DNA of 64,000 nucleotides, taken from Macrostomum lignano. Its lineage: Eukaryota. A program made the position numbers and the translations under genes. Shown piece by piece: positions 6,060 to 61,998 of this stretch. The notes below the pieces were generated by a model. The model made no database searches. It was not told the origin of the DNA and saw only the letters and a program-made list of their open reading frames with translations. The stretch spans positions 87,468-151,467 of the forward strand of contig NIVC01002662.1 of the NCBI GenBank assembly GCA_002269645.1. The letters are read 5' to 3'. The stretch's first letter is position 1; every line of letters begins with the position of its first letter.

Positions 6060-6060
6060 T

Positions 6061-32519: not shown

Positions 32520-33260
32520 ATGTTCCGCCCAACAGCCACTCTCTCCGTTCTGTTCTGCACTGCCCTCTTGCTGACTTGCGTCACCTGCAGATTCGTCCGC
32601 TTCGAATACCTGGGATGCTACAAAGACCGTGTGTCACCCAGAGACCTGAACGGGCTCAGTGGAGGCAGCAGGATCGGTGGATTCGATGTCGAAAATTACA
32701 AGAGAGTCCGCAGCGCGGAGATGTCGCACGAGCTGTGCAGCGGCATCTGCTCGATCGGTAGCTTCCCGTACTTCGGAGTGCAGTACAGCACAGAGTGCTA
32801 CTGCGGCAACTCCTTCGGATCCCATGGCCTGGCGAGCGAAGCCGACTGCAGCATGGATTGCTCGGGAAACGCGATGCAGAAGTGTGGCGGCCCCGTCAAA
32901 AACTCCGTGTTCTCCCTGAGCTACCCAGGTACTGTCCTGATTTCTAAATCCCTGTACCTTTAGTCAGAAAGAAAGCATGCTAATTATTGAAAAGCTGATT
33001 TATCGTGCAATTTTTCAGTTTCGGACAACAACACCTACACGGTAGTGAAGCAGTCCAGCCCTCCCGTGACATCCGGTACCACTTCCGTCTGGCCTGTCGC
33101 TGCCCAGTCCGTCGAGGACTGCCTGCTCCGGTGCAGCGCCAGAGCCGACTGCCAGGCCGCCGTTTTCTCCCGACAGGAGCTCGCCTGCCACCTGCTGGAG
33201 TTCGTGTACCCGCCTGGCCACCTGAGCGGACCCGAGTGGACTCTGTTCGTGCGTGGCTGA
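32520..33260 (+). CDS. Secreted WSC + PAN/Apple domain protein, gene A (intact, 216 aa)
   Basis: join(32520-32928, 33019-33260), phase-1 GT-AG intron. Signal-peptide-like MFRPTATLSVLFCTALLLTCVTC; WSC YLGCYKD...MSHELC...C...YFGVQYSTECYCG...C...C.G....CGG..KNSVF; PAN core EDCLLRCSARADCQAAVFS...ACHL. TATAATA at 32439 and AATAAA at 33358. Confidence 0.88.
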
Positions 33261-33785
33261 GCTGGAGCGGTGCGGTGACCGACTGGCTCAGCTGATGAGC
33301 TGAACAGGGACTCCAGCAAACTGAATCTTTGATGCGAAGTCCCACATCCTCAAGACAAATAAAAGTTTAAGCTAAAAAGCTGTGTTGGTTTCATTCAGAA
33401 ACTCTCTTATTCAGGGGTTCTGTTAGTTTTTGCACTCGTGCTGTTTTTTGCGCCGTGTGCTTCAGAAAAAAAAAGAAATAAAAAATGCCTATGGTTGCAG
33501 ACAAACTTCCTCTTGAAAATTCATCAGCAATTGGTTAGAAATTTTCCGGATTTTTTCTGCTTGATTTTCAACACAAAAGAGATTCATTTCAGAATTATAT
33601 GGATTTCTGCTTTCATTGTATTTTTCTGTGGGCTTTTTCTTCTATAGGATTTGTGGAAGAGCGTCACACACACACACTGACAACTAAAGTGGAAAGTCGA
33701 TGCAAGAAGTTTTCTGTTTCTTTTGGCACATTAGCCGACCGACATCTCGTTTGTAAACTGTTGCCTCTCCAAGAGGAGTTTTAGA

Positions 33786-34148
33786 GGGGGGGCCGTAGCC
33801 CAGCGGTAGCGCAGCTGCTCTGGTGTGCCAGCGACCCAGGCTCGATTCCAAGTGCAGTCACATTAATTTGGGGCTGAATTGGAATCTCGCTTGGCTCTGC
33901 TTGTGCAATTAACGGCCTTGAGAGCCAACCCCCCAAGGCGCAGTGAAGTGTACATGCCTAACGATAATATAAAGTTAGGGCCGCTGTACACTCCTGTGTG
34001 AGTGTGTGCCTGCGTACGTATCCGCGCGCTTGTATGCCTGCTCAGGGGAGTCGGCGGAATGGGCAGTAATGCCTCTCGCCGGTTGTGTGCCTATGTCGCT
34101 TAAAGTGCGCCAGGGTGCACACAACCCCCCTGCCTCTAATAAAAAAAT
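33786..34148 (+). mobile_element. Full-length tRNA-derived SINE (family 1) with 15-bp TSD
   Basis: A box TAGCCCAGCGG, B box GGCTCGATTCC, A-rich tail; TSD AAGAGGAGTTTTAGA at 33771-33785 and 34149-34163; partial copies at 19051 and 59250. Confidence 0.88.
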
Positions 34149-34748
34149 AAGAGGAGTTTTAGACTAGTTAAAGAACATCCGCCCTTCATTGCACTTTCGT
34201 GTTCTTCCATGACTGTACAGTTTGTCCATGACTCCAGCAACTCTATGCTTGGTAAAAAAAAGTCTGAAAATTTTATTCAAACATTTTGCAACGCCTTCTT
34301 GGCGACATATCGTCTCACAACCAGCGCTGACAGCAGACAGCAGAGAGCTGTAGACAGAGGCGCGATCGAGTCCGATCGTAGCGGACCCTTGCACCATAAG
34401 CAACGTTGCAGTGCAGGTGCGGAAACAGTCCATGATGGTTAACAATGGATCAATACAGTTGCTCGCTTCCTGTGGGATTTTCGCTTGATTTCCTGTAGAT
34501 CGCCCATGCTTAACTCCCGTCAAATGTGTGTTGGCTAACTTTGAAATCAAAACATCCATGGTGTTTTGTTATTGTTTATTAGACGACTAATAAACAATAG
34601 AATAGAAAAGCTATTGTTCAGAACTATCTTCCTAGCACAGTCACAATCATCCTAGTTTGCCTGGAAATCGCTTCCGTGATTCCAACTGTAGAACTATAGA
34701 AGTTTGCTAGGCATTGAGCCGATGTTTAACGTGCACTCTGCGGCTATA

Positions 34749-37118
34749 TGTTGTAAAGTGAGTTTACTCACTGGTTTGTTTTGCTAGTCGGTGTTTGGGG
34801 GTCAAGGCATCCGATGTACATGCGCGCTCTGTTTGTATATGTACATGCGTTCTCGAGTAAATATAAGAATAGCTCCACCCTTTGGGTGAGGGTTAGAATT
34901 TTTTTTGTTTGTTGGACTAAACCTGACTGGCTTGTCTCTCGCTCACCACATTTTGGCGTCGCGCGGAGAAATCAATTGATTTGGGCCAGCGTGATTCAGC
35001 ACAAGTGCGAACTCTAAAATCTGCCAAGTCATGAGCAGCACAGAAGGTGCAAATGCAAGTGCAATGGGCGACCCACAGAGAGGGTCTCAACAAGCAGCAG
35101 CCCAACAGTCAAGCAGAGATACAGCCAACAGAATGAGTGTCAACATTTCGCCACCGCAGCCGTTTCTGCCAGCCGCTGGAGCACCGCTGATTGAATGGAA
35201 CCGATGGAAAGCAATGTTCAGCAACTACCTGCTAGCATCGGGAGCCATCGATCTGCCGGAGCAAAGAAAACAAGCGTTGCTCATCCACTGTTTGGGTGCA
35301 GAGGGACAAAACATCTACATGTCTCTACAAGCCAGCAGCAATCAGGAGGAAGGAGAGCAACCGCCATCAACAGTTAATGACACGCTGAAGCTCCTGGACA
35401 CGCACTTCGGACCCAAGGTCAACGCAGTTTCTGAGAGGCACAGATTCCGACAGAGAGCTCAGCGACCGGGCGAAAAGATCAGCGACTTCGTTGCCGCGCT
35501 GCGAAACCTGGCTTCGAACTGCGACTTCAAGACCTTCCAGGAGGAGATGCTGCGTGACCAGCTCGTCGAGAAAGTGCTCAGCAACCACATCAGGGAGCGA
35601 CTGCTTATGGAGCCGGAGCTGACCTTGGCGACAGCTGTGCAGTTGGCGGAGCGACTGGAAACTGGACTGCTGGAGGCCCAGGCCATCAAGGGAGGCAGCC
35701 ACACAGACCCAAGCAGCTCGTGGGGAGTCCAGCAGATCAGCAAGGCCAAGAAAAGTGGAGCGGCGGCAAGACAGCACGAGGCACTGAAGCCGACAACCAA
35801 CGGCCGGAGCTGCGGCTACTGTGGCTCAGCGGCGCATTTCGGTGGACAGACTTGCCCAGCAAAGGGGCAGAAGTGCAAGTCCTGCGGCAAGTGCGGGCAC
35901 TTCGCCAGAGTCTGCAGGAGCGGCAACCGAGTGCGACAGCTTCAGGATGAGTACTCCATCTGCACTGTGTCGACAGCTGCGGCAGCAAGCAAGCACTGCG
36001 AAGTGCTGCTAAACGGGAGGCCTGTCAAGCTGCTCGTTGACTCCGGTTCGCGAGTCTCCATCATCACCAAGACGACGTACAACAGACTTTTTCCAACGTG
36101 CCCCTGCAGGCGTCATCACGGAAGCTGGTCGCTTTCAACGGCAGCAAGATCGGCGTGCTTGGTGACATCCTGACCTCGGTGCAGCTCAAGGACAAAGTAG
36201 TGCCTTACGTCAACCTTAGCGTGGTCAATACCGGATCTGACATCCTGGGGTGCGACCTCATGGATCAGCTGGGACTGCGGATCGTCACTGCAGACGGTGA
36301 GCGAGTGCAGACAGTCGGCACCAGAGCCCTGCCTGACTGGATCCCAGGCCGGTTCGACCAGTTGACTCAGGGACTCGGACACATCAAAGGATTTCAGCAC
36401 AGGCCGCGAGTCAACCCCGCGGTGCAACCGACTGCTCAACCGTTGCGCAGAGTGCCGCTCAGCCTAAGGGATTCGGTTCAAAAGAAGTTCAAGTGGCTCA
36501 AAAGAACCCGACCGCCTCAATTAGGGTGCGGCGACCTGGTGCGAGTGCGATCTCCGCGGATGCGAGGCAAGCTGCAGAGCCACGTGTCACCACCTCTACG
36601 GGTCAACGACATCATCAGCCCGACGATCGTCAGGTTAGAGGACGGCTCAAGGTGGCACACCAGCCTCTGTATGCCTCATGCGGAGCCCGAGGGTGCCAGC
36701 ACGACTTCGGCAACGGCAATGCCGCCACAGCCGCCAGTGGCTGCAGAGCCGGCAGCGCCAGAAGGCCGACGGACCCGCCGCCGGAGACCGTTGAGGCCGA
36801 CGCGGAGCTGCGGCGCAGTGCGCGACTGCGGGCACCACCGTTGTGGTACGGCCAGGTCGTGACGCATTGATTGCCAGCTGTGAAGGGAATTAGTGACTGT
36901 TAAGGAGGAGGGTGAATGTTGTAAAGTGAGTATACTCACTGGTTTGTTTTGCTAGTCGGTGTTTGGGGGTCAAGGCATCCGATGTACATGCGCGCTCTGT
37001 TTGTATATGTACATGCGTTCTCGAGTAAATATAAGAATAGCTCCACCCTTCGGGTGAGGGTTAGAATTTTTTTTGTTTGTTGGACTAAACCTGACTGGCT
37101 TGTCTCTCGCTCACCACA
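34749..37118 (+). mobile_element. Internally deleted Ty3/Gypsy (Mag-like) LTR element, non-autonomous (2370 bp)
   Basis: 202-bp TG...CA LTRs at 34749-34950 and 36917-37118 with 2 differences seen; 5-bp TSD CTATA; PBS TGGCGTCGCG at 34954; PPT AAGGAGGAGGG before the 3' LTR. RT, RNase H and the IN core are absent. Confidence 0.93.
35031..36870 (+). pseudogene. Gag-protease-(deleted RT/RH/IN) polyprotein remnant
   Basis: Gag WNRWKAMFSNYL...ERHRFRQRAQRPGE, two zinc knuckles (CGYCGSAAHFGGQTC, CKSCGKCGHFARVC), protease LLVDSGSRVS. A 1-nt shift in the C run near 36102; sequence jumps at about 36480 from the pre-RT motif PLRRVPLSLRDSV to the integrase C-terminal tail GDLVRVR. Confidence 0.85.
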
Positions 37119-37639
37119 CTATACCCGAAAGATCTCATTTTTAAGACACGATCCTCCTGTGCGCTCCTCCAAATCTTATCTGATCATGGACTTCTCGCTG
37201 TGCAATTTGCAACTAAGTCAGAGTCAAATTTTCATGTCATAAACTAAATTAAAGTGGCTTAAACATTGGCATAAACGAGGGTGAAAATCTTACAACACCA
37301 TGATTCCACCTCAAAGTTGTAAAAGCAGCGTCGCAGGACATCCTGCAGCTCATCCCGGTTTTAGATGACGTAGATTGAAAGGGTCTTGACAACCGTCTGC
37401 TGTAACAATATCTGACTGCAGGGGCCAACTAATGCTTTTGTAATATGCATTTTTTTAAAGATATAATATCGTCTACATGTATGAAGTTAAAGAAATACAA
37501 TATATTATGCGACTGCAGTTGTCCGAATTAGACTACTCGTAAGTAAGCACTGCTGGCTACATTCCGATCAGTTAAACTACGAGCTGGTAAGAAATTTGGC
37601 AGAGCAGTTCATCAGCGGCTACCGAGTCACATAAGAGCG

Positions 37640-38360
37640 CTTGTCAACCATAAAAGAATCGCCATGTCAACCATAAAAAATCGACATGTCAAACATAAAA
37701 GAATCGATATGTCAAACATAAAAGAATCGACATGTCAAACATAAAAGAATGGATATGTCAAACATAAAAGAATCGATATGTCAAACATAAAAGAAGCGAC
37801 ATGTCAAACACAGAAGAAGCGTCATGTCAAACATAGAAGAAGTTACATTTCACCCATAAAAGAAGCGACGTGTCAACCATAAAAGGATCGCCATGTCAAC
37901 CATAAAAAATCGACATGTCAAACATAAAAGAATCGATATGTCAAACATAAAAGAAGCGACATGTCAACCTTGATAGAATCGACATGTCAAACATAAAAGA
38001 AGCGACATGTCAAACATAAAAGAATCGCCATGTCAACCATAAAATAATCGACATCTAAACCATAAAAGAAGCGACATGTCAACCTTGAAAGAATCGACAT
38101 GTCAAACATAAAAGAAGCGACATGTCAAACATAAAAGAAGCGACATGTCAATCGTCAAAGAAGCGACATGTCAAACATAAAAAAGGGTTATGTGAAACAT
38201 AAAAAACACGACATGTCGACCATAAAAAGGGTTATGTGAAGCATAAAAGACATGATATGTCAACCATAAAGGAATCGCCATGTAAACCATAAAAGAGGAT
38301 TATGTGAAACATAAAACACACGACATGTCAACCATAAAAGAAGCGCCCATTCAACCGTAA
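37640..38360. repeat. 23-bp minisatellite (about 30 degenerate copies)
   Basis: Unit CATGTCAAACATAAAAGAATCGA. Confidence 0.92.
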
Positions 38361-39530: not shown

Positions 39531-39532
39531 TT

Positions 39533-40040: not shown

Positions 40041-40781
40041 TCAGCCACGCACGAACAGAGTCCACTCGGGCCCGCTCAGGTGGCCAGGCGGGTACACGAA
40101 CTCCAGCAGGCGGCAGGCGAGCTCCTGTCGGGAGAAAACGGCGGCCCGGCAGTCGGCTCTGGCGCTGCACCGGAGCAGGCAGTCCTCGACGGACTGGGCA
40201 GCGACAGGCCAGACGGAGGTGGCACCGGATGTCACGGGAGGGCTGGACTGCTTCACTACCGTGTAGGTGTTGTTGTCCGAAACTGAAATTGGAGGTAGAT
40301 GCAGCTTCTCATTAGTAAACATGTTTTTAAACTGACTATAGGCACTGAGCTTTAGAAATCAGAACAGTACCTGGGTAGCTCAGTGAGAACACGGAGTTTC
40401 TGTTGGACCCGCCGCATTTCTGCACCGCGTTTCCTGGGCAATCCATGCTGCAGTCGGCTTCGCTCGCCAAGCCATGGGATCCGAAGGAGTTGCCGCAGTA
40501 GCACTCATCCCGTACTGCACCCCAAAGTACGAGAAGCTGCCGATCGAGCAGATGCTGCTGCACAGCTTGTGCGACATCATGCTCAAATAGACACTACCAG
40601 AAGGGTGATGGACACTGAACCCGCCGATCTTGCTGACTCCACTGAGCCCGTTCAGGTCTCTGGTGGACGGATTGTCTTTATAGCAGCCCAGGTAGGAGAA
40701 GCTGACGAGTCTGCAGGTGACGCAAGTCAGCAGGAATGCAGTGCAGAACAGAACGGAGAGAGTCGCTGCTGGGCGGAACAT
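40041..40781 (-). pseudogene. Secreted WSC + PAN protein, gene B (inverted paralog of A; one 1-nt frameshift, possibly a sequencing error)
   Basis: Exon 1 40781-40371, exon 2 40282-40041. Same signal peptide, intron position and 3' UTR as A. TAC GGG AT GAG TGC lacks 1 nt in the G run (40509-40511); otherwise open. Confidence 0.85.
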
Positions 40782-42737: not shown

Positions 42738-43026
<289 letters not shown>

Positions 43027-43056
43027 TATTTATATATATATAAGGACGCAAAGATA

Positions 43057-44975
43057 TTATGGTGGGCGTCTTGCGCGCAGACGCTCGGTTGGCTGATGTA
43101 GCAAGGTTAGCGCCAGCGGGTTTTGCTCCCCTCTGCCGTAGCTGCGGAGGCAGTGGCCGATGAGCATTAGCCGGCGCCGCTGGAGAGTGGCACTGAGCTG
43201 AGGCACACGGGCTCTCGCCATCAGCTGGTCCGTCGGCAGCCGCTCTGGGTAATGGATGCCAAGGGCGAACCGCAGCAGCGATCGGTAGGCAGCGTCCAGG
43301 GCTCGGGACCTCGAGTCGGTCATTGGCACTGCCTCCAGTCCGTACAGGAAGATTGGCTCTACGGCAGCGCGGAACAGGCGCATCTTCAGGTCGTCGTTGG
43401 CAGCTGAGCTGAAGACCTCCCTGAGGAGATGAGCCGCGCGCCAGGCCTGTGACCTCCGGTCGGCGATGATGGAGTCAGGGCTCATCACGAAGGAGCCCAG
43501 GTACCGGAAGTCTCTGCAGGCTGAAATGACTTGTCCATCTGGTAGGGTCAGGGTTGGTGCTGCATCGGTGCCCACGTGCAGCACCTTCGTCTTGCGTGCG
43601 TTGATTTGCAGTCCGACTCGGGCGCTCTCCTCATAGAGTCTCGAGAGCGCTCTCTGGGCGGCAGTCGGACTGCGGCACAGCAGGGCAATGTCGTCGGCGT
43701 ATGCGAGGGCGGGCAGAGGGGCAGCACCGCGGCGGGAGCTCCGGCGTGACGCCAGCAGGTAGCTGTCCTCCTCTGTGAGGCTTCGGCGCAGCACGTAGTC
43801 GACGACAAGGATGAAGAGCAGTGGAGCCAACGTGTCACCTTGGAGGACTCCAGAGCTGGTGCAGAAGTCCTCAGTTGGGCCATCGCTGGTTTGGACAAAG
43901 GCTTTGCTGTTGTTGTAGAGGTCCATCACTGCAACGATAAGAGCCGGAGGGACGCCATAGTGTTCGAGCAGCCACGCGATCGCGCGCCGGCACACTGAGT
44001 CAAAAGCTTTGCGGAAGTCCACAAAGACAATTGACACAGCTCTTTGGTGAGTTTTACAGGCCTCGACGACTGCTCGAAGGGCTGCAATCTGCTCTGTTGT
44101 CGAGCGACCGGGCCTGAAGCCACTTTGGAGGCTCAGGATCATTTGGTTGAGGCCAGGCAGCAGTCGATTACGCAGTATAGCATTGAGCAGCTTAGCCAGA
44201 GTGCATTCCAGAGCGATGCCGCGTTGGTTGTCCAGACTGGTGGATGCGCCCTTCTTGGGGATGGAGACGATCTTAGAGGTGCGCCAGCTGTCAGCAGCAG
44301 TAGCACCTGGGTTGCCTCCAAGCGGACAGTGCTTGTTGAGCACAGCTGTGATGTCCTGTGTCAGCTCTGGCAGCTTGAGCACCCTGGGTGGAATGCCATC
44401 TACTCCGGCGGCAGCGTCGGGGCGCATGGTTCTGAGCACTCGGTTCACCTCGTAGGCAGTCAGCGGGCCGGAGTTAAAAGCCGAGGGCTCGGCCGGGGTA
44501 AAGTTTTCGATCGGTAGCAAATCAGCAGAGGGTGGTGAGGCGTTGAGCACATTGTGATAGTGAGTGGCCAGCAGGGCTTTGCGATGGTGTATAGACTCAG
44601 CACCTACAGCGGCATTTGGCCTCTGCTTCCTGCCAGTCAGGCGGTTGATGGTGCGCCAGGCCGCTGTGTGCCGGCAGTTGTCTGTTGCTAGTTGAATCTC
44701 AGCAACAGCCTCCTGGACAAAGGCTTCGGTCCTCCGGGCGTGCGTGTCGCGAAGATGGGCCCAGGCTGTTTCAGCCTGCTCACTGTCTTGGCCAAAGATT
44801 GCGGTTGTTCTTTGCACGTCGCGCCTAGCGATGGAGATCTCCTCGTCGGAGTCCCAGGCGGCTTTTGGCTGGTGCGGTGTTCGTTTTGGTAGGGTCGAGG
44901 CAGCTTTCTCAACAGCTCTGGTGAAGGCGTCCTCCGATTCATTCAGGGCCGGAGTAGCATTTTGCAGCTTTTCAA
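43057..44975 (-). mobile_element. RTE-clade LINE fragment: reverse transcriptase domain, truncated at both ends
   Basis: Uninterrupted frame from about 44975 to 43057 with QSGFRPGRST, FVDFRKAFDSV, GVLQGDTLAP, LAYADD, FRYLGS, LRRRLMLIGHC-type motifs. No endonuclease domain; the normal C-terminus and 3' tail are missing. Confidence 0.92.
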
Positions 44976-45060
44976 TGAACTAAGCTCATTTTCATTGTTC
45001 TCATGTTCATTGAAATGAGCTTTTCAATGAACAATGAACTTTTCAATGAACTTTCAATGA

Positions 45061-45529
<469 letters not shown>

Positions 45530-46318: not shown

Positions 46319-47051
46319 TCAGCCGCGCACGAAGAAGTCTCCATCGGTGCTGCTCAGACTGGCAGGCGGGTAGGCGAACCTCAGCAGGTGGCACAGGCGC
46401 TGCTGGCCAGAGAAAATCACAGCCTGGCAGTCAGCTGAGGCCTCGCACATCATCAAGCACTCGGCCTTGATTTTGGCAGCGCTGGTCCAGTAGGTGCTCT
46501 GGGTGGACTCCACCGTCTGATTGGGCATCTGCGTCTGCTCAAAATACTTTCTATCTGAAAGTGTAGAAAATTTCTGTTAGAGTTGATCATAAATTCTACT
46601 TAAAGACGCTTAAAACATAGAGGTAAAATCAGAACTGCTCACACTGAGCTCACTCACCCGGGTAGGTTAGGGCGAAGACTGAGTTTCGCCACGAGGCTCC
46701 GCACATTTGAGCTCCGTTTCCACCGCAGACGCCGTTGCAGTCGGTCTCGTTTGCAGTTCCGAGAGACCCGTAGGAGCTGCCGCAGAAACAATGATAATTG
46801 GCCTGCACACTGAAGTACGGGAAGCCGCCCAGAGAGCAGACGCTGCTGCAGAGCTCGTGTGTCATATTAAGGCTGCTCAGCGTGAAGCTTTCGATGCTGA
46901 ACTGACCGATTCTGCTCACTCCAGTGAGTCCTCTCAGATCTCTGGTCTCATTGTCCACATAGCAGCCAATGTAGGACACCTGAGTTGCCCTGCCAGAAAT
47001 GCTAACAACCAGAACAGCAAAGTTTGTAAAAAATGAAATCGTCTTGAGCAT
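46319..47051 (-). CDS. Secreted WSC + PAN protein, gene C (intact, 209 aa)
   Basis: Exon 1 47051-46658 (donor GTGAGT), exon 2 46554-46319 (acceptor tttcAG), phase 1. Signal peptide MLKTISFFTNFAVLVVSISG; WSC YIGCYVD...MTHELC...; PAN AECLMMCEASADCQAVIFS...LCHL. Confidence 0.88.
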
Positions 47052-47106: not shown

Positions 47107-47402
47107 GTCGTTTTTTAGGAAAGATTTTTGCGTAATCAGATATTTCGTAATGTGCTCAGGGTACTGCTCATAGTAACCTATCTAGCATTAAAAATACATT
47201 ATTAAAATAATTTCATAAAGTTATCGAGACCATCGGTGAGTAGACTAGATTGACAACCCACATAAAACCTAACGGGGTCAGTTATCCCTGACCCCAACCC
47301 TAAAGTGCAGGTCAGTTGATTTACAGTTGCATGCCATCTTTAAATTGCGCTTAGCTCCTAAATTTCGTGCATTTTTAGAGTGAACAATGTTATAATAAAG
47401 TT

Positions 47403-47595
47403 AGAGTCCACCCAGAGCACCTACTGGACCAGCGCTGCCAAAATCAAGGCCGAGTGCTTGATGCTGTGCGAGGCCTCAGCTGACTGCCAGGCTGTGATTT
47501 TCTCTGGCCAGCAGCGCCTGTGCCACCTGCTGAGGTTCGCCTACCCGCCTGCCAGTCTGAGCAGCATCGATGGAGACTACTTTGTGCGCGGCTGA
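47403..47595 (+). pseudogene. Orphan 5'-truncated PAN exon fragment (D), inverted near-identical copy of gene C exon 2
   Basis: ESTQSTYWTSAAKIKAECLMLCEASADC...DYFVRG*, plus homologous 3' flank; no acceptor region and no WSC exon. Confidence 0.85.
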
Positions 47596-49837: not shown

Positions 49838-51022
49838 ATGCAACAGTCCAAATTGGTTACTCTTGTGGCTCTGGCACTGAGCACTGCTCTGCTGACATCC
49901 TGTGCGGACTCCAGAGCGGTCCGACTGTCGTACCTTGGCTGCTTTAAGGATGGCTCGAAAAGAGACCTCACTGGCATCCAATTGGAGTCACCAGAATTGG
50001 AACCTTCACCACCGTTTTTAGTCTGTTGGTGAGCAGCGGCTCCCTGATGACGCCTGAGTACTGCGCCGAAGTCTGCTCGCTCGGTGGATTTCCCTACCTG
50101 GGAGTGCAGACTGGGTCGCAGTGCATGTGCGGCCCCTCTTATGGATCGCTGGGACCGGCCATCGAGACCGACTGCAACACTCCCTGCCGCGGCAACCCAG
50201 GTCGAATGTGCGGAGCCTCCTGGCGCAGTTCGGTGTACGCACTGACCTACCCGGGTGAGCGAAGTTGCTTTACTGGGGATTCAGGCTTTTGACTGCTGGC
50301 GGTTTAGGTTAGGGTTTAGATAAGGGTTTGGGATAGGGTTTAGGTTAGGTTTTAGGTTAGGTTTTGTGTTTGGTTAATGGTACAGTTTTGTTAGAGTTTA
50401 GGTAGTCACTTTGTCGCCTATCGTTAACAATGCATTATTTTTGAAAATTGAAAAATTAACAATGTACTCGTATTTTCTCTGTTCGATGATCAATTTTTTT
50501 CTTCTGGATAAAAGGTTAAATAAAGGTCATGTAAGTTATTTTGTAGTGAAAACGCAAACTGAATTCCCCCTCCTTCAGTTGCTGGTGGCAGAGTTTGCAC
50601 AGTGCAGACTCAACTTCAGCCTTTGTATTTCCATTGCGAATCTGGTATCTGCAGGGGGGGGGGCGCTGACTTACTGGGAATGGGAACTAAGCTAAACTAA
50701 AAAGCATGCATTATAGTAAGCTGAGTACACTAGCTGTTGAAAAAGAAATGTCTGAAACGACCTCAACATACAAGCGACGCGCATTATTATTCCAGAGAAA
50801 AACCTCTTCACTAAGCAGAGCCTGCCTACTTTGACTGTCGAATCCACGAAACCAACGCACTGGATCAGAACTGCCGAGACAGTATTCGAGTGCCTGTCCC
50901 TGTGCGAGGCCTGTCCAGCCTTGATCTTCGCTGCCCAGCAGCGTCTCTGCTACTTGCTGAGGTTCGCCTACCCGCCTGCCAGCTTTAACAGCACCATCGG
51001 AGTGTACTTTCTGCGTGGCTGA
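49838..51022 (+). pseudogene. Secreted WSC + PAN protein, gene E (one frameshift)
   Basis: Exon 1 49838-50254, exon 2 50796-51022. Signal peptide MQQSKLVTLVALALSTALLTSC; frame shifts at ATCCAATTGGA (49976-49986), after which GVTRIGTF...MTPEYC resumes. PAN domain has a 3-aa deletion (CEACPALIF). Confidence 0.85.
50300..50380. repeat. Degenerate TTAGG(G)-like repeat in gene E intron
   Basis: GGTTTAGGTTAGGGTTTAG...GGTTAGGTTTTAGGTTAGG. Confidence 0.7.
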
Positions 51023-51632: not shown

Positions 51633-53020
51633 CACTGGACTGCGTCGCATATCATGTTTATACTCTTAGCTCTCAGATTTGCTGTCTATGGCCTGAAGGA
51701 CACTGGACTGCGTCACATTGCGGTTATATCAATGTTTATACTCTTAGCTCTCAGATTTGCTGTCTATGGCCTGAAGGACACTGGACTGCGTCACATTGCG
51801 GTTATATCAATGTTTATACTCTTAGCTCTCAGATTTGCTGTCTATGGCCTGAAGGACACTGGACTGCGTCACATTGCGGTTATATCAATGTTTATACTCT
51901 TAGCTCTCAGATTTGCTGTCTAAGGCCTGAAGGACACTGGACTGCGTCACATTGCGGTTATATCAATGTTTATACTCTTAGCTCTCAGATTTGCTGTCTA
52001 TGGCCTGAAGGACACTGGACTGCGTCACATTGCGGTTATATCAATGTTTATACTCTTAGCTCTCAGATTTGCTGTCTAAGGCCTGAAGGACACTGGACTG
52101 CGTCACATTGCGGTTATATCAATGTTTATACTCTTAGCTCTCAGATTTGCTGTCTATGGCCTGAAGGACACTGGACTGCGTCACATTGCGGTTATATCAA
52201 TGTTTATACTCTTAGCTCTCAGATTTGCTGTCTATGGCCTGAAGGACACTGGACTGCGTCACATTGCGGTTATATCAATGTTTATACTCTTAGCTCTCAG
52301 ATTTGCTGTCTATGGCCTGAAGGACACTGGACTGCGTCACATTGCGGTTATATCAATGTTTATACTCTTAGCTCTCAGATTTGCTGTCTATGGCCTGAAG
52401 GACACTGGACTGCGTCACATTGCGGTTATATCAATGTTTATACTCTTAGCTCTCAGATTTGCTGTCTAAGGCCTGAAGGACACTGGACTGCGTCACATTG
52501 CGGTTATATCAATGTTTATACTCTTAGCTCTCAGATTTGCTGTCTATGGCCTGAAGGACACTGGACTGCGTCACATTGCGGTTATATCAATGTTTATACT
52601 CTTAGCTCTCAGATTTGCTGTCTAAGGCCTGAAGGACACTGGACTGCGTCACATTGCGGTTATATCAATGTTTATACTCTTAGCTCTCAGATTTGCTGTC
52701 TATGGCCTGAAGGACACTGGACTGCGTCACATTGCGGTTATATCAATGTTTATACTCTTAGCTCTCAGATTTGCTGTCTATGGCCTGAAGGACACTGGAC
52801 TGCGTCACATTGCGGTTATATCAATGTTTATACTCTTAGCTCTCAGATTTGCTGTCTATGGCCTGAAGGACACTGGACTGCGTCACATTGCGGTTATATC
52901 AATGTTTATACTCTTAGCTCTCAGATTTGCTGTCTAAGGCCTGAAGGACACTGGACTGCGTCACATTGCGGTTATATCAATGTTTATACTCTTAGCTCTC
53001 AGATTTGCTGTCTAAGGCCT
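51633..53020. repeat. 78-bp satellite, 18 nearly identical copies
   Basis: Unit ATGTTTATACTCTTAGCTCTCAGATTTGCTGTCTA(T/A)GGCCTGAAGGACACTGGACTGCGTCACATTGCGGTTATATCA; only one variable site seen. Confidence 0.97.
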
Positions 53021-54204
53021 AAAGATTGATTTCAGATTGCGTTTCTATGGGCCAAATTACCAATTATAAGCGTATACAGTAGAGACTAAAAACTCGGGAG
53101 GTGCATCTTTTTTCTATTTAATAGGCTTTGGATTGAAAATATGGAAGCAATACTGCTATCACAAGTCAAAGTCGGACCTACTTGAGGGAGCTAGCGAACA
53201 ATATAGATAAAGAAAACAAGATTTCTTCAAGCGATCAAGAGAATAGGATAACGAGAGCGTAAGACAAGCATAAGACAACAGGACCCCAAAAAACTGAAAT
53301 ATCAAATCACGTGATTTTCCAGTGTGTTTCTCTTAGTTTCAATTAGAATGAAGTTGCTCTCTATAGTCTTGTCATGTGCTGTGCCTGTGTCCATGGCCGT
53401 CGCATGATGTGTACAATTTGCTACATTACGCTCGTATTGTTATCAGTGTGTGCTATATGCTCGCAACCGAACTTCAACCGAAATCCAAAATGATGAAAGA
53501 TAATTAAAGTGCTCCCTCGATAAAAGGTGCTTCGAATGCAACTCTGTCGCAACGACTTCTCACACTCAAGTGGGCTCAGCCTATAATTTGCTATACTCAA
53601 GAGTCCACTAAGGATAAAAAATTCTGGACTTTGAAGCGTTGGCTTCATTTCGATAGTCACTCTTCCAGAGCGAGCTTTCATTATAAGCTGCTTTAGAATT
53701 ACACAAAAAGTTCTGCAAGTCAGCTGAATGCGATGAATAGCACACTCCATTTTAATTGGCATCAAGGTTCTGGAGCTTGAGAAATACATTAACGCACCTG
53801 AGAGGCAGTCATTCGAGCTACTAGAGTGGAATACAAGCATCTGGAGCTTGGGAAAGATATTGACGCGTCTGAGAGGCCGCCATGCGAGCTAATCGATTGG
53901 AATGCAAACCTCCGGCTTTTAGGTTACTTAACTACAAACATGCAGCAAATATTTAATCAGTCCTTTATTAGTAGATATGCAAATTAATTCTATCAGAATT
54001 GTCTCCTTTTGTTTTTCATAAGTGACTTTTTTACCATCCATTTGGATTAACGAACTCGTCAGCCAGTAGGTTTGAGTTGTTTACCGTGGTCTTTCACTCA
54101 TTCGGCAGTTGGGGATAAATTCGCTTCACTCCCGAGCTGATTTGACAGAAGCTTCTCCAGAGAAACAGGACAAAACGCAGTACTGCTGCTTGTCGCTGGA
54201 GACC

Positions 54205-54960
54205 ATGAAGGCACTGAGAAACCGGCAATTGATTTTCATGGCGCTGTCCCTGTGCCTCTTGCTTCTGTGCGCTGCTAGGAGACTCGCCCGATTTGAATAT
54301 CTCGGATGCTACGTAGACGCGAGAGACGGTGCCAGGGACCTTCCCGGACTGCAGGGAGTGCAGAGCCTGGCCGAGTTTTCCGTGCACTCCACCGGCCGCG
54401 TCTCCAACACGTCCATGACGCTGTAACTGTGCAGCCGCATCTGCTCTCTGGGCGGCTTCCCGTACTTCGGCGTGCAGTTCGGCAAGGAGTGCTACCGCGG
54501 GCTCTCGTACGGCTCGCAAGGAGCGGCCAGCACAGACCAATGCTTCGTGAACTGCGCCAGTCAATCGAGCGACATCTGCGGCGGACCAGATCCAAGAATC
54601 GCTTATAGCATTGTAAATATTTTGCTTCGTCCAATGTCTTCTCTCAAGATTGTCAAGAACTGTTACAGAATATATAATTACTATACAAGAACTACCAGTA
54701 TACTGCCACTTTTCAGCAATGAAAAGCTTCAACGTCGCTGTGGATCGCGCCAGCTTCACTGTCTGAGATTCTTTCCCTCGACCGGCTTACCGCGGCATGC
54801 AGTCTGATGACCTGCCTGAATGAGTGCAGCACAACCAACGAATGTCAAGCTGTGTTGCTCTCGCAACATCAGCGCCTGTGCTACCTGCTGCCGTTTGCTG
54901 GAGTGCCGCCGTCTCTGGCGAACGTGACTGGGGAGTTCTTCCCCCGCGCTTGATGGCTTC
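54205..54960 (+). pseudogene. Secreted WSC + PAN protein, gene F (pseudogene)
   Basis: ATG 54205, signal peptide, WSC FEYLGCYVD...; nonsense TAA at 54424-54426 (MTL*LC) and loss of a WSC Cys (ECYRG). The PAN exon from about 54717 has a stop and a frameshift but retains SLMTCLNECSTTNECQAVLLS...LCYLL. Confidence 0.82.
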
Positions 54961-56858: not shown

Positions 56859-57112
56859 TCTACCATTGCTCATTTTTAGTTATTGCATCAAGTTGTTTCT
56901 TGAATCGTTCATTTGGACGAAACACAAACGAAAAAAGCATTGTATTTTACTTGCGAGAATCAAAAGCCACTGCCTGAACCTGATGGTCAGAGAATCTCAT
57001 CAACTGAAGTTAAAACTACCATCAATATCAATTTAGGTATGCCACTTTAAGTAGTACATTGAGCTCATTAGTTTACTGGCTTTTAACCAACCAGATTGTC
57101 TCTAAAAACCGG

Positions 57113-57119
57113 TATAAAA
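57113..57119 (+). promoter_or_regulatory. TATA box of gene G
   Basis: TATAAAA 80 nt upstream of the ATG at 57199. Confidence 0.5.
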
Positions 57120-57198
57120 GCAGACAAACACAGCTTTTATCGCCTACTGCACTAGTAAGACCAACGGCAGAACTAAAATCCCAGCTACTCAAGTAGCA

Positions 57199-57905
57199 AT
57201 GCTCAAGACTTTCGTCTGCATTGTGGGTCTCGCCGTCAAGGTGCTCTGTGCCGCAATAGAGTAACTCAGGTGTCCTACATTGGCTGCTTTGTGGACAATC
57301 GAGGCAGAGACCTGAGAGGACTCACTGGAGTGAGCAGAATTGGACAGTTTAGCACTGACAGTCTTGGGGTGAGAAGCGCCAGTATGACTCACGAGCTCTG
57401 CAGCAGCGTCTGCTCTCTCGGCGGCTTCCCGTACTTCGGGGTGCAGTTCGGTCTGTTTTGCTCCTGCGGCACCTCCTACGGATCTTTGAGAGCTGCTAGC
57501 GAGACCGACTGCAACCGCGTCTGCACTGGGAACGGAGCTGCTAAATGTGGGGGTCGGTGGCGCAACTCCATGTTCGCTTTGGCCGACCCAGGTGGGCCTT
57601 CTACAATTTTTAAAGAATTTTCAAACAAATTTTTGCCAATTTTGTTAAAGCCAGTTTGTATTTTTACAGATAAAAAGTATTTCAAGCAGTCGCAGATGCC
57701 CAACCAGACGGTGGAGTCCACCCAGAGCACCTACTGGACCAGCGCTGCCCGAACCGACATCGAGTGCATGGGGCTGTGCGAGGCCTCAGCTGACTGCCAG
57801 GCTGCGATTTTCTCTGGCCAGCAGCGTCTGTGCCACCTGCTGAGGTTCGCCTACCCGCCTGCCAGTCTGAGCAGCACCGATGGAGACTACTTCGTGCGTT
57901 GCTGA
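57199..57905 (+). pseudogene. Secreted WSC + PAN protein, gene G (1-nt frameshift in signal peptide, possibly a sequencing error)
   Basis: Exon 1 57199-57591, exon 2 57670-57905. MLKTFVCIVGLAV then 1 nt missing (about 57236-57265) before RVTQVSYIGCFVD; WSC and PAN domains otherwise complete and close to gene C. Confidence 0.85.
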
Positions 57906-59249: not shown

Positions 59250-59472
59250 GCAACACGCGGATACGTACGCAGTCATACGCACAGGCACATATGCACTCAC
59301 ACAGAACTTTATTATCGTTAGGATGCAGTATGCCTCGGGGGTTGGCCCGCAAGGACGTTAATTGCACGAGCAGAGCCAAGCCAAGATTCCAATGTGACTG
59401 CATTTGGAATCGAGCCTGGGCCGCTGGAACATACCCCTGTGTAGCCTCCCGCTAGCAATCTGCGCCGTCTCC
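59250..59472 (-). mobile_element. SINE family 1 copy (3'-truncated)
   Basis: Minus strand CCAGGCTCGATTCCAAATGCAGTCACATT...GTGCAATTAAC...GCGTACGTATCCGCG aligns to 33830-34030. Confidence 0.75.
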
Positions 59473-59699
59473 TGTTGGGAGGCAACAATTTAAGAAAGCA
59501 ATATAATTTTTTAATCAACTACATTTTGGTTTTGACCATTTAGGTTGCTATTTGGTACGAGTAGTATCCTCAGGAAACTGATGTCTAGAGCAAAGCATCA
59601 GCTCAAAATTCAGCTATGGAGTCCAAGATGTCAGCATCACCTGTGAGCTTTGGCATCAAAGTCTACGAAGGCTTGGCAACTGAAGGACTGGAGGGGGGT

Positions 59700-59876
59700 C
59701 CCAGGACACCCCTCAATTACCCCAGCTAATGCTGGCGCCCATTTTACAGCTGGGTGAACTGAAGCAATGCAGAGTTAAGTGTCATGCTCAAGGACACAAA
59801 TTGTTCCGAGTGGGTCGAAAATCGAACCCCCGACCTTTTAGTCATGAGTCCGACGCTCTATGCAATAGGCTACACA
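59700..59876 (-). mobile_element. SINE family 2 copy: tRNA head + CORE-like domain
   Basis: Minus strand: A-box-like TAGCCTATTG, B box GGTTCGATT, then TGTGTCCTTGAGCATGACACTTAACTCTGCATTGCTTCAGTTCACCCAGCTGTAAAATGGG, resembling the recalled MIR CORE consensus. Confidence 0.7.
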
Positions 59877-60299
59877 TGCAGGCGAAGTCAAGAGCTGACC
59901 AAGAACTAATAAAGCATACTAGACAAGGACTCACAGTATCGTCAGAAGTTTTAATATGCGTGTCTAGTTTGTTTACTTTCTGATTTGAAAGTTTATCAAG
60001 GTAAAATCTTGGAGACAAGAATGTATTGAAGTCCGTAAAACCTGCACAGGCCCTCCAGGGCAATTTGTAAGATTTACGGGTTCAGCCCAAAAATGCTCAA
60101 CTTGTGGAAACAAGAATAATGAAGGAAAGCATTCATCAATGAGAAAGTGAAAATGAAAGTTCGTCAATGGTTGGTCTGACTTCTGTTCTACTGGATTTGA
60201 ACCTGAATGACTCAATCTTTGTGGTTGGTTAATTTTTCTTAAACTTAACTATAACAATATGACAGTGCTCTACGTGCAGTACACGGAATACATAGAACA

Positions 60300-60378
60300 T
60301 AGATAGAGAGATAGATAGATAGAGAGATAGATAGATAGATAGATTAGATTAGATTAGATTAATTAGATTAGATAGATT
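60300..60378. repeat. (GATA)n/(GATTA)n microsatellite
   Basis: Directly visible. Confidence 0.9.
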
Positions 60379-61211
60379 GAAATCCAGTGGAAAGCAAGTC
60401 CGCATTTCCCAGAATTGAAAAAGAGGACCGTAGCAGCCTTTTTATCCCTAGCCCTCTAGATGCACCAGTCGCTGGTCAGGCCTGGACAACTCAAACAATT
60501 CAAACAAAAGTACTTGAGAAATTTTACTTTTTCTAAAAAAGTAGAAACTTTGTGTAAGCAAAATAGATGTGCTGCCGATGCTCAGGGCTTACGTTTGTTA
60601 CTAAGTTAAGTTGACCAAATCACCAACACGCGACGGTATCGCCGGTCCATCCAAGCGGATTTTGGCGTCGTCGCGACTCCAACTGGTCTAGAAAGTGTCC
60701 CTGCTGATAACTGGGCCAGAGCTATGCCCCAGCCTCTATTCAGGACGTCCTGCTGCTGACCTTTGGGCACACCATCAAGCTCACCCTGACTGCATGACCT
60801 TAACTTGTTTAGTGGTGTTTTTGTTGTTGTGAATAAACATTGCAATATTATTGTTTCGTTTGTATACGAGTATATATAGTGAAAGACTCTATCTCAAGCC
60901 ACTAATCCGCGTTTCAGATGCGAGGAAAATTCCGTTTTGCAAAATTTATTGAATTCGCCCTGGCTTCTTTAGTTTATATTGAAATCGGTTGTTTAACAAC
61001 GGGTAGTCCATAGGCCGATAAGGAATCAGTGATTTACTTTAATCAAGACAGAACCATTACTTTGACGGGTCTTAGGAAATCCTAGGTATTGTAACTGCTG
61101 GAAATCTACATTAATGTTTCCAAAATAAAACATATCAAGTGGTTCATAGTTCATAATTCGTCTTCTCCATGCCAACACACTCCAGTCGCAGGACTCAAGC
61201 CAATTTTGCTC

Positions 61212-61998
61212 TCAGCCACGCTGGAATAGTCCAGTCGGGTCCGGTCAGGCCGGCTGGCGGGTAGGCGAACGCCAGCAGGTGGCAGGCGAGCAGCCGCTCG
61301 GAGAAAACGGCAGCCTGGCAGTCGGCTGCGGTGCTGCACCGGAGAAGGCAGTCTACGACAGAATGGACAGCGGCCGGCCAGGACGAGGTCTTGGTGCTGT
61401 TGGTCTTGACGAAGAGGCTGTTGTCCTTCTCAACCAGGTAGTAACGGTCTGAAATAAAAATTCATAAACAAGTTTTAGAGCCACGTTTTTCTGCTATCTA
61501 TTTCATAAGGTCTTGAGAAAAAATAAATAGCTGCCTCAAAAGACGAGCTAGTCGATTAAAAATTATTTTTGACCATGGATTAATCGCCCGTCACTCACAG
61601 GGGTAGGTCAGAGCGAACACCTAATTTCGAAATCGACCTCCGCATATTTGCTGCGAGTTTCCACTGCACTGTCTGTTGCAGTCGCTCTCATTGCCTTTGC
61701 CTGCGATCGATTGAGTTGCCGCAGAAGCACTCGACACCAACCTGCACCCCGAAGTACGAGAATCCGCCAGAGAGCAGGCGCTGCTGCACAGCTCGAGAGT
61801 CATGCTTGCTCTTATGTGAGGGTCGCCTGAGCGAACCTCAAACGGACCCAGCTGGGTGACTCCAGTCAGTCCGTCTAAGTCTCTGGCCTTGCCCGTGTAG
61901 TCCACGTAGCAACCCACGTAGGAGTAATTGACAGACCTGCAGGTCGCACAGGTGAGCAGAGCGCCGAGTAAAATCAAAATTCGCGATATCTGTTCCAT
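61212..61998 (-). pseudogene. Secreted WSC + PAN protein, gene H (pseudogene)
   Basis: Exon 1 61998-61599, exon 2 61448 to about 61212. Signal peptide MEQISRILILLGALLTCATC; two compensating frameshifts (about 61767 and 61700), nonsense TAG at 61621-61623 (N*VF), and a small deletion before the ancestral RG* end. PAN domain VDCLLRCSTAADCQAAVFS...ACHLL is A/B-type. Confidence 0.85.

What the first reader, a model, noticed from the sequence alone, without database searches (positions are those of the whole stretch)
32520..61998. Cluster of small secreted WSC + PAN/Apple proteins evolving by birth-and-death (candidate undescribed lectin-like recognition family)
Seen: seven two-exon genes (A+, B-, C-, E+, F+, G+, H-) and one fragment (D) in 30 kb. 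All share signal peptide, 8-Cys WSC domain, a phase-1 intron at YP(G), a 4-Cys PAN core and a short FVRG-type end. Two PAN subtypes occur (A/B/H and C/D/E/G; F is divergent), four genes have TATA-like boxes, and only A and C are cleanly intact. Known: WSC domains (yeast Wsc sensors, Kremen, fungal beta-glucanases) and PAN/Apple domains are carbohydrate- or protein-binding modules. I do not recall this minimal two-domain secreted architecture as a characterised family. Inference: a lineage-specific expanded family of mucus, adhesion or innate-immune recognition proteins.
Basis: partly seen in the sequence, partly recalled or inferred. Interest (0 to 1): 0.8.

Follow-up and report, generated by a model that had tools for sequence, protein, structure and literature searches.

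The report
Flatworm secreted WSC–PAN gene cluster
The window holds a real tandem cluster of small, probably secreted two-domain (WSC + PAN/apple) genes of the flatworm Macrostomum lignano. They belong to an uncharacterised family of about 200 copies seen only in this species, and they most likely bind sugars or proteins outside the cell.

Summary
Window 32.5-62 kb carries seven two-exon WSC+PAN genes (A, B, C, E, F, G, H) and one exon-2 fragment (D). All have a phase-1 GT..AG intron after the YP codons, an 8-Cys WSC domain and a 4-Cys PAN core. There are two PAN subtypes, A/B/H and C/D/E/G.

The genome is Macrostomum lignano, assembly Mlig_3_7. A and C are intact. B differs from a duplicate copy with an otherwise identical coding region only by one G in a G-run, which is probably an assembly error. 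E and G each have one frameshift. F and H are true pseudogenes.

The cluster is a slice of a much larger family. A PAN-exon 24-mer occurs 213 times genome-wide, and most sampled paralogs are intact. Several members have RNA-based gene models. Copies on duplicated contigs show dN/dS of about 0.13-0.2.

The family evolves by block duplication, deletion and pseudogenisation, and the PAN exon is homogenised (dS 0.10 against 0.47 in the WSC exon). Full-length relatives were found only in M. lignano.

Its role in mucus, immunity or adhesion is untested. Known prostate (seminal-fluid) WSC genes of this species belong to other subfamilies. This is a new variant of known domains, of moderate interest.

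The parts
32520..32928 (+). Gene A exon 1: signal peptide and WSC domain. Intact.
   Evidence: ATG to a GT donor. Pfam WSC 1.5e-16. 100% identical to UniRef A0A1I8GI38.
33019..33260 (+). Gene A exon 2: linker, 4-Cys PAN core and an FVRG stop. The spliced protein is 216 aa.
   Evidence: AG acceptor, phase 1. PAN_1 9.8e-7, above the cut-off. The AF2 model has pLDDT 80.8. Fold hits are Kremen and Wsc1 for the WSC part, and plasminogen, HGF and SML-2 for the PAN part.
40041..40781 (-). Gene B (exon 1 40371-40781, exon 2 40041-40282). It is A-type. It has a single 1-nt deletion in a G-run near 40511 and is otherwise an intact 217-codon gene.
   Evidence: There are 0 mismatches and 1 gap over 742 nt against C462:684k, which encodes NCBI BOX15_Mlig003751g3. 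A transcript-derived ORF (P0013) is on record for this contig.
46319..47051 (-). Gene C (exon 1 46658-47051, exon 2 46319-46554). Intact, 209 aa, PAN subtype 2. TATAAAA at -55.
   Evidence: Pfam WSC 2e-12 and PAN_1 2.4e-5.
47401..47595 (+). Fragment D: only the 3' two-thirds of a subtype-2 PAN exon with its stop codon, lying head-to-head with C.
   Evidence: PAN_1 7e-6. The duplicated contig C462 has a fuller gene in the same position next to its C copy (573340-573681).
49838..51022 (+). Gene E (exon 1 49838-50254, 541-nt intron, exon 2 50796-51022). It has a 2-nt TT insertion near 49982 that shifts the frame, and a 3-residue deletion in the PAN core.
   Evidence: The C462:571k copy lacks the TT and is intact. 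PAN_1 is not detected.
54205..54953 (+). Pseudogene F. It has an in-frame TAA at 54424-54426, a conserved Cys changed to Arg at 54496, a lost donor and exon-2 frame, and a divergent PAN.
   Evidence: WSC 1.9e-12, no PAN hit. The copy at C462:568k is also broken.
57199..57905 (+). Gene G (exon 1 57199-57591, exon 2 57670-57905). The ATG is out of frame with the mature part because of a 1-nt shift in the signal-peptide region. It has DP instead of YP and ends FVRC.
   Evidence: WSC 1.4e-12 and PAN_1 8.9e-5. TATAAAA at -86.
61195..61998 (-). Pseudogene H (exon 1 61599-61998, exon 2 61195-61448), PAN subtype 1. It has two compensating frameshifts in the WSC part, a TAG at 61621-61623, and a frameshift at the C-terminal FVRG.
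   Evidence: WSC 7e-14 and PAN_1 1.4e-5 on the read-through translation.
34757..37242 (+). LTR-retrotransposon remnant between A and B: a gag/PNMA-like ORF bracketed by direct repeats.
   Evidence: It is shared with C462 at 99.4% identity.
42738..45529 (-). Non-LTR reverse-transcriptase ORF (43057-44979) flanked by long (ACT)n arrays. It lies at the point where colinearity with the duplicated contig C462 breaks.
   Evidence: RVT_1 3e-32, tandem repeats, synteny break.

Best explanation
This is the proximal end of a large tandem array of a Macrostomum-lignano-restricted multigene family.

The protein. Each gene encodes a protein of about 190 residues after signal-peptide removal. The protein is disulfide-rich and soluble, and it is built from two modules of the PAN/apple superfold. 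The first is an N-terminal WSC domain with 8 Cys. The second is a C-terminal minimal PAN core with 4 Cys, which would form the two core disulfides.

Proposed mechanism (inferred, not shown). The proteins are secreted binding proteins that act like lectins. The WSC module diverges about ten times faster between paralogs than the PAN module. It also carries a family-specific, highly variable beta-hairpin inserted between strand 1 and helix 1. I propose that this module gives each paralog its own glycan or ligand specificity. The PAN module is kept nearly identical across paralogs, and I propose that it supplies a common function such as docking to a shared partner or self-association.

How the array evolves (shown). 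It changes by tandem and block duplication and deletion, occasional pseudogenisation and truncation, one lineage with intron loss, and homogenisation of exon 2 (most simply gene conversion).

The tissue and biological role are not known.
For: Shown:
- Domains, Cys patterns and splice structure.
- The AF2 model has pLDDT 80.8. Its WSC part superposes on the yeast Wsc1 cysteine-rich domain (TM 0.78, rmsd 2.6-3.0 A) and on Kremen. Its PAN part matches plasminogen, HGF and the galactose lectin SML-2.
- WSC is itself a PAN/apple fold. WSC domains bind beta-glucan in fungal lectins and bind protein in Kremen (PMC9024836).
- The N-termini are hydrophobic, and there is no second hydrophobic segment or other domain.

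The genes look functional:
- A compared with its two duplicated-contig copies gives dN/dS 0.13-0.21 in WSC and dN = 0 in PAN.
- 15 of 18 copies in C462 560-740 kb, and 22 of the 30 best loci, give intact two-exon ORFs.
- At least 10 members have NCBI models, and that annotation derives from RNA-seq (PMC5730564).

Expansion and turnover:
- 213 motif hits against 0 in the control.
- About 55 kb and 53 kb that are present in C462 are absent from the window contig.
- Pseudogenes F and H and fragment D.

Asymmetry between the modules:
- dS is 0.47 in the WSC exon and 0.098 in the PAN exon.
- A against B is 85% identical in exon 1, 78% in the intron and 97.9% in exon 2.
- Median terminal branch length is 0.63 for WSC and 0.059 for PAN.
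- The most variable stretch is residues 51-67 (pN 0.28-0.38). It aligns to a gap in Kremen and is modelled as a beta-hairpin.
Against: - There is no binding, secretion or expression-site data for any member.
- No SignalP-type tool was available, so the signal peptide is read from the sequence only.
- No sliding window reaches pN/pS > 1 in the WSC exon (maximum about 0.7). The divergence is therefore compatible with relaxed constraint rather than selection for diversity.
- The near-identity of exon 2 could be a neutral by-product of gene conversion, with no 'constant module' meaning.
- Only two of the eight copies in this window are cleanly intact.
- RNA-based gene models in a redundant genome may rest on multi-mapping reads.
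Confidence: 0.6

Rival explanations
1. Reproductive role. The family encodes seminal-fluid or other genital-gland secretions, and its expansion and turnover are driven by sperm competition or sexual conflict.
For: [quoted passage not shown] RNAi of one of them, Mlig-pro46, lowers sperm competitive ability (PMC6953679). Several of those transcripts are 0.65-1.0 kb long with single-WSC-length alignments, which would fit a transcript for a 210-aa protein. Rapid duplication and loss is typical of seminal-fluid genes (general knowledge).
Against: None of the 36 primers of the 18 RNAi-tested candidates maps in the window. The Mlig_3_7 gene IDs of those candidates do not overlap the 12 family IDs recovered here. 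Four candidates located in the genome (pro46, pro38, pro11, pro28) lie on other contigs. Their loci are AT-rich (36-41% GC, against 55-61% for the coding sequences of this family). They match the family's WSC profile only weakly and have no family PAN exon within 3 kb.
Confidence: 0.2
2. Surface, mucus or immune role. The proteins form a diversified repertoire of soluble pattern-recognition lectins secreted by epidermal or gland cells against microbes.
For: The layout is a variable module plus a constant module in about 200 tandem copies. This resembles invertebrate recognition repertoires such as VCBPs or FREPs (general knowledge). WSC domains bind beta-glucan and chitin-type polymers in fungi (PMC9024836).
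Against: There is no expression, challenge or binding data. There is no signal of positive selection at window level. No paper links any member to immunity.
Confidence: 0.2
3. Digestive role. The proteins are gut-secreted carbohydrate-binding proteins aimed at dietary algal polysaccharides; the worm is fed diatoms.
For: In other spiralians, WSC repeats are fused to glycoside hydrolases. One example is Octopus GH10 xylanase with five WSC domains. Fungal exoglucanases and glyoxal or copper oxidases also carry WSC domains.
Against: These proteins have no catalytic domain. There is no expression data. The diet argument comes from general knowledge only.
Confidence: 0.1
4. Mostly dead DNA. The array is a decaying segmental duplication with no present function, and the apparent family size comes from assembly redundancy.
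For: Five of the seven genes in the window carry lesions. The assembly holds 180 Mb of blocks at least 95% identical (PMC5730564).
Against: Duplicated copies show purifying selection (dN/dS 0.13-0.21). 15 of 18 neighbouring copies on C462 are intact. RNA-based gene models exist for many members. All 12 Cys are invariant. The 213 copies fall into several distinct subtypes on many contigs, which about 1.5-fold redundancy cannot explain.
Confidence: 0.05

Closest known systems
Fungal WSC-domain lectins and sensors (Serendipita indica WSC3, yeast Wsc1 cysteine-rich domain)
   Same: An 8-Cys WSC domain with a PAN/apple-type fold. The model superposes on the Wsc1 cysteine-rich domain at TM 0.78. The fungal WSC lectins are also secreted carbohydrate binders (PMC9024836).
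   Different: The fungal proteins have several WSC repeats, or a WSC domain plus a Ser/Thr-rich stalk and a membrane anchor. None has a C-terminal PAN core. Here the WSC carries a 15-residue hairpin insertion in loop 1.
Kremen1/2 (vertebrate Dickkopf receptors)
   Same: Best sequence and fold match for the WSC module in the PDB. Kremen shows that an animal WSC domain can bind protein rather than sugar.
   Different: Kremen is a membrane protein with Kringle, WSC and CUB domains. Here there is no kringle, CUB or membrane anchor.
M. lignano prostate-limited WSC proteins (Mlig-pro46 and others; seminal-fluid candidates)
   Same: Same species, and a WSC domain. They are also multi-copy gene clusters (PMC5977470, PMC6953679).
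   Different: Different subfamilies. They are AT-rich, often have two WSC domains, lie on other contigs, and have no family PAN exon nearby.
Spiralian multi-WSC proteins (oyster 'putative fungistatic metabolite', Mytilus five-WSC plus Kringle, Octopus GH10 plus five WSC)
   Same: Nearest non-Macrostomum WSC sequences from animals.
   Different: These are 600-950 aa proteins with 5-8 WSC repeats. None of the sampled proteins has a PAN domain.
Two-module PAN/apple lectins and adhesins (Sarcocystis SML-2, Toxoplasma MIC4, oomycete CBEL)
   Same: Small secreted proteins that pair PAN/apple-type modules, sometimes with a carbohydrate-binding module, for glycan binding or adhesion. SML-2 is a fold hit for the PAN part. 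CBEL is described in PMC3532174.
   Different: No detectable sequence relationship. These proteins use canonical PAN/apple domains or CBM1, not WSC.

Membership tests
WSC domain (Pfam PF01822) | Profile score above Pfam's gathering cut-off (27.8 bits) | tested here: met
   47.5-60.8 bits in A, B, C, E, F, G and H.
WSC domain (Pfam PF01822) | Eight conserved cysteines (four disulfides) and the CGG motif | tested here: met
   C33, C73, C77, C93, C95, C110, C114 and C122, plus G123, are invariant in 9 paralogs. F has lost one (Cys to Arg at 54496).
WSC domain (Pfam PF01822) | WSC-type PAN/apple fold | tested here: met
   In the AF2 model the blocks of residues 31-130 have pLDDT 86-97. Foldseek finds Kremen at 6.5e-8 and the Wsc1 cysteine-rich domain at 8.5e-6 with TM 0.78.
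WSC domain (Pfam PF01822) | Carbohydrate binding | not testable with these tools
   This needs recombinant protein and glycan or polysaccharide binding assays.
PAN/apple domain (Pfam PF00024 PAN_1) | Profile score above the gathering cut-off (21.4 bits) | tested here: met
   22.7-29.0 bits in A, B, C, D, G and H. The matches cover only profile positions 8-56 of 76. E and F do not reach the cut-off.
PAN/apple domain (Pfam PF00024 PAN_1) | The two core disulfides (four Cys, helix to strand) | tested here: met
   C171, C175, C181 and C193 are invariant. The model places a helix at 168-176 and strands at 183-187 and 192-196.
PAN/apple domain (Pfam PF00024 PAN_1) | Canonical six-Cys apple pattern with the disulfide that links the N- and C-termini | tested here: not met
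   Exon 2 has only four Cys. This is a minimal PAN core, like the HGF N domain, and not a full apple domain.
PAN/apple domain (Pfam PF00024 PAN_1) | PAN fold | tested here: met
   Foldseek finds plasminogen PAN (probability 1.00, 80 columns), HGF N domain (0.97-0.99) and SML-2 (1.00, rmsd 2.3 A over 58 columns). E-values are only 0.01-0.1, and pLDDT is 60-85 in this part.
Kremen family | Kringle + WSC + CUB + membrane anchor | tested here: not met
   Pfam finds only WSC and PAN in a 216-aa protein.
M. lignano prostate-limited seminal-fluid candidates (Weber 2018; Patlar 2019) | Identity with a listed transcript or gene ID, or a primer match | tested here: not met
   0 of 36 primers map in the window with up to 3 mismatches allowed. 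There is no overlap of gene IDs. The other 58 candidates could not be checked because no sequences are held.
M. lignano prostate-limited seminal-fluid candidates (Weber 2018; Patlar 2019) | Expression limited to prostate gland cells | not testable with these tools
   No expression data are reachable. ID searches in papers and supplements found nothing.
Secreted protein | Cleavable N-terminal signal peptide, with no membrane anchor | tested here: inconclusive
   Residues 1-23 are hydrophobic and end in small residues before Arg (for example ...LLLTCVTC|RF). AF2 models this stretch as a low-confidence helix and finds no other hydrophobic segment. No signal-peptide predictor was available.
Birth-and-death multigene family | Tandem paralogs, pseudogenes or fragments, and copy-number change between related haplotypes | tested here: met
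   In addition, exon 2 shows concerted evolution, which the pure model does not include.

The most novel reading that the evidence does not exclude
The roughly 200 genes form a recognition repertoire of a 'variable WSC head, constant PAN tail' kind that is unique to macrostomid flatworms. The hypervariable loop-1 hairpin would set the ligand specificity and the homogenised PAN module would couple every variant to one common partner. This would be a lectin-based counterpart of VCBP- or FREP-type innate recognition systems, or of rapidly evolving mating proteins.
Probability: 0.2. Interest if true: 0.7.

Novelty: new variant of a known kind. Interest (0 to 1): 0.42.

Why it matters
If the proteins are secreted binders, this is one of the largest families of small secreted proteins in a laboratory flatworm that has transgenesis and RNAi, and nobody has studied it. 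The strong contrast between a fast-diverging WSC exon and a homogenised PAN exon gives a clear hypothesis to test about modular recognition proteins. It also offers a worked example of gene conversion limited to one exon. The family adds a separate branch to the WSC expansion that was already noticed among seminal-fluid candidates of this species. For genome annotation, it shows that single-base homopolymer indels in Mlig_3_7 can make live genes look dead; gene B is the example.

Tried and rejected
- The first AlphaFold run used a 9-sequence alignment and gave pLDDT 48, which is unusable. It was replaced by a 21-sequence run.
- An exact look-up of protein A on public contigs, hoping for RNA-seq assemblies with sample information, found nothing.
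- Full-text searches for the family's gene IDs found nothing.
- Supplement searches in three Macrostomum transcriptome papers found no IDs or no files.
- Searches for Macrostomum or flatworm papers on WSC or PAN gave only the two seminal-fluid papers.
- I considered that the cluster equals the known prostate WSC seminal-fluid genes. I rejected this for the 18 candidates that have primers and for the four I located.
- I looked for positive selection with sliding-window pN/pS. No window in the WSC exon exceeds about 0.7. The single value above 1 lies in the PAN exon and rests on very few changes. I therefore make no claim of diversifying selection.
- I considered that the 'Plasminogen [Crassostrea gigas]' best hits of two prostate transcripts indicate a PAN domain. 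More likely they reflect WSC repeats plus a kringle, as in the Mytilus relative. I did not use them as evidence.
- The copy at C462:565k proved too divergent from G (96 mismatches in 737 nt) to judge G's lesion.


Full report
WHAT THE SEQUENCE IS

The window is G000:C2662:87468-151467, the last 64 kb of a 151-kb contig of a 764-Mb, 5269-contig assembly. Protein A is 100% identical to UniRef A0A1I8GI38, and every close homologue is from Macrostomum lignano. The size and contig number match the Mlig_3_7 assembly of the DV1 line. That assembly was built with Canu from PacBio reads and polished with Pilon. It holds 180 Mb of redundant blocks at least 95% identical, because DV1 carries duplicated chromosomes. 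Its NCBI annotation derives from a genome-guided RNA-seq transcriptome (PMC5730564).

CHECK OF THE OBSERVATION

A tblastn search with A finds eight copies between 32.5 and 62 kb and none elsewhere in the window. I read each copy in three frames and verified the exon borders.

- A, B, C, E, G and H each have a first exon of 393-417 nt. It encodes the signal peptide and the WSC domain and ends one base after the YP codons.
- The intron is phase 1 and GT..AG. It is 78-150 nt long, except in E where it is 541 nt.
- The second exon is 227-254 nt. It encodes a linker, a 4-Cys PAN core and a short FVRG-type end.
- Pfam WSC is above its cut-off in all seven genes. PAN_1 is above its cut-off in A, B, C, D, G and H, but not in E or F.
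- The 8 + 4 cysteines are invariant among paralogs.
- A PAN-exon tree separates A/B/H (100/100 support) from the C/D/E/G group, and F is a long branch.
- TATA-like boxes lie at -53 to -86 for A, C, G and H. A, B and H also share an inverted CCAAT motif, TGATTGGT.

INTEGRITY OF THE COPIES

- A (216 aa) and C (209 aa) are intact.
- B has one missing G in a G-run (GGG against GGGG). Its twin on contig C462 is identical over the other 742 nt and encodes NCBI BOX15_Mlig003751g3. This is either a residual long-read consensus error or a very young null allele.
- E has a 2-nt TT insertion that the intact C462 copy lacks. It also has a 3-residue deletion in the PAN core.
- G has its ATG out of frame with the mature part.
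- F has a TAA stop, a Cys-to-Arg change and a broken splice frame. Its C462 counterpart is also broken.
- H has a frame excursion in the WSC part, a TAG stop and a C-terminal frameshift.
- D holds only the last two-thirds of a PAN exon.

THE CLUSTER IS THE EDGE OF A MUCH LARGER FAMILY

The window is colinear, in inverted orientation, with C462 from 722 kb down to 682 kb. It then jumps to 627-625 kb (gene C) and to 572-568 kb (genes E and F). About 55 kb and 53 kb of array that are present in C462 are therefore missing here. The first break coincides with a non-LTR reverse-transcriptase element flanked by (ACT)n arrays.

C462 560-740 kb carries 18 WSC exons, of which 15 give intact two-exon ORFs. 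They are arranged in repeated multi-gene blocks. Of the 30 best loci genome-wide, 22 give intact 210-217-aa models, and two more are intact intronless copies.

A 24-nt PAN-exon motif occurs 213 times in the assembly and 0 times in the reversed control. Three sequence variants account for nearly all of the 100 places that were listed. The protein search scored only 150 of 2329 candidate segments and still found 209 significant exon matches on dozens of contigs.

EVIDENCE THAT THE GENES ARE ALIVE

- A compared with its two duplicated-contig copies gives dN/dS of 0.13-0.21 in the WSC exon and dN = 0 in PAN.
- At least ten family members have RNA-derived NCBI models. The B locus on this very contig also has a recorded ORF (P0013).
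- Coding-sequence GC is 55-61%, against about 45% for the region.

HOW THE FAMILY EVOLVES

Among 20 non-identical A/B-type paralogs, dS averages 0.47 in the WSC exon but 0.098 in the PAN exon. Median dN/dS is 0.42 for WSC, rising to 0.8-0.9 between A-type and B-type copies, and 0.37 for PAN.

Within the window, A against B is 85% identical in exon 1, 78% in the intron, 97.9% in exon 2 and about 65% in the flanks. C against G is 79%, 59% and 91% in exon 1, intron and exon 2. A five- to eight-fold drop in synonymous divergence confined to one exon cannot come from selection on the protein. It points to homogenisation of exon 2, most simply by gene conversion.

Sliding windows show the most variable stretch at residues 51-67 (pN 0.28-0.38), but pN/pS stays at or below 0.7. 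I therefore do not claim positive selection.

STRUCTURE

With a 21-sequence alignment, AlphaFold gives pLDDT 80.8 and pTM 0.68. Foldseek matches the N-terminal module to Kremen WSC (6.5e-8), to the Wsc1 cysteine-rich domain (TM 0.78, rmsd 2.6-3.0 A) and to glyoxal-oxidase WSC. It matches the C-terminal module to plasminogen PAN, the HGF N domain, factor XI and kallikrein apple domains, and the galactose lectin SML-2.

WSC is itself a PAN/apple fold that shares the two core disulfides (PMC9024836). The protein is therefore a tandem of two PAN-superfold modules. The variable stretch aligns to a 15-residue gap in Kremen and is modelled as a beta-hairpin (strands 55-58 and 62-64). Canonical PAN/apple domains have a hairpin insertion at this position.

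DISTRIBUTION

A profile HMM search of 1.84 billion representative proteins found 9315 hits. Every hit among the best 150 that covers both modules is from M. lignano. A profile-seeded word search of 5.8 billion proteins gave the same result: non-Macrostomum hits cover only the WSC half. Sampled multi-domain spiralian hits are WSC repeats with or without a kringle or GH10 domain, and none has PAN.

Weaker WSC+PAN proteins ranked below the top 150 cannot be excluded. Other Macrostomum species are not in these databases.

FUNCTION

Nothing is published on these genes. In this species about a third of prostate-limited transcripts hit WSC proteins, and one of them affects sperm competitiveness (PMC5977470, PMC6953679).

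However, none of the 36 primers of the 18 tested candidates maps here, and their gene IDs differ from those of this family. The four candidates I located lie on other contigs. They are AT-rich, match the family's WSC profile only weakly, and lack the family PAN exon within 3 kb.

The link to seminal fluid is therefore only the shared domain.

MOST LIKELY MECHANISM

The domains, fold, hydrophobic N-termini, purifying selection and modular asymmetry are shown. Binding and secretion are inferred.

I propose that these are secreted soluble binding proteins. The divergent WSC module, and above all its variable loop-1 hairpin, would set a paralog-specific glycan or ligand specificity. The homogenised PAN module would provide a shared docking or self-association function. 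Confidence is about 0.6 for the molecular picture. No biological role exceeds about 0.2.

VERDICT

The feature is real and correctly described. It is a new architectural variant of known domains, forming a very large species-restricted family. Interest is moderate. The point that best merits follow-up is the variable-head, constant-tail pattern across about 200 copies in a genetically tractable flatworm.

Noticed in passing
window 5928-11386 (+): A Ty3/gypsy-type LTR retrotransposon with long open gag and pol frames (protease, RT, RNase H, integrase). A 24-bp x 13.7 tandem repeat sits inside the pol frame at 7922-8250.
   Followed up: partly
window 15765-16398 (-): Remnant of a mariner/DDE-type transposase, split over two frames.
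   Followed up: partly
window ~20900-30657 (+): A HECT-domain E3 ubiquitin ligase gene; its last exon scores HECT 1e-63. It lies immediately upstream of the cluster, and its introns are filled with minisatellites of 17-46-bp units.
   Followed up: partly
window 42738-45529: A non-LTR reverse-transcriptase ORF bracketed by two long (ACT)n arrays. It sits exactly where colinearity with the duplicated contig C462 breaks, which suggests it marks a rearrangement junction.
   Followed up: partly
window 51649-53024: A 78-bp satellite of 17.7 copies with 99% matches, between genes E and F. One frame is open for 468 codons, but it is only repeat sequence.
   Followed up: no
window 34757-37242: A gag/PNMA-like ORF flanked by direct repeats (an LTR-element remnant) between A and B. 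It is shared at 99.4% identity with C462, so it predates the split of the two contigs.
   Followed up: partly
G000:C85:742580-743239 and G000:C2066:148936-149595 (L001, L002): Intact intronless paralogs (220 aa) in which the phase-1 intron is gone and the junction reads YPGTQDTQ. This is intron loss in one lineage of the family.
   Followed up: partly
window, about 110-125 nt upstream of the ATGs at 32520, 40781 and 61998: A shared TGATTGGT motif (inverted CCAAT box) upstream of the subtype-1 genes A, B and H. It was not seen upstream of the subtype-2 genes.
   Followed up: no
C-termini of all family members (for example window 33252-33257): Arg215 is invariant in 9 paralogs and the last residue is Gly in 7 of them, so most proteins end in Arg-Gly. 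A terminal Gly could serve as an amidation donor, but this is pure speculation.
   Followed up: no
G000:C40:1208361, C93:446301, C313:352, C84:47742 (L031, L050-L053): Genomic loci of the published seminal-fluid candidates Mlig-pro46, -pro38, -pro11 and -pro28. These are AT-rich WSC genes of other subfamilies, and pro38 is present on three contigs.
   Followed up: partly
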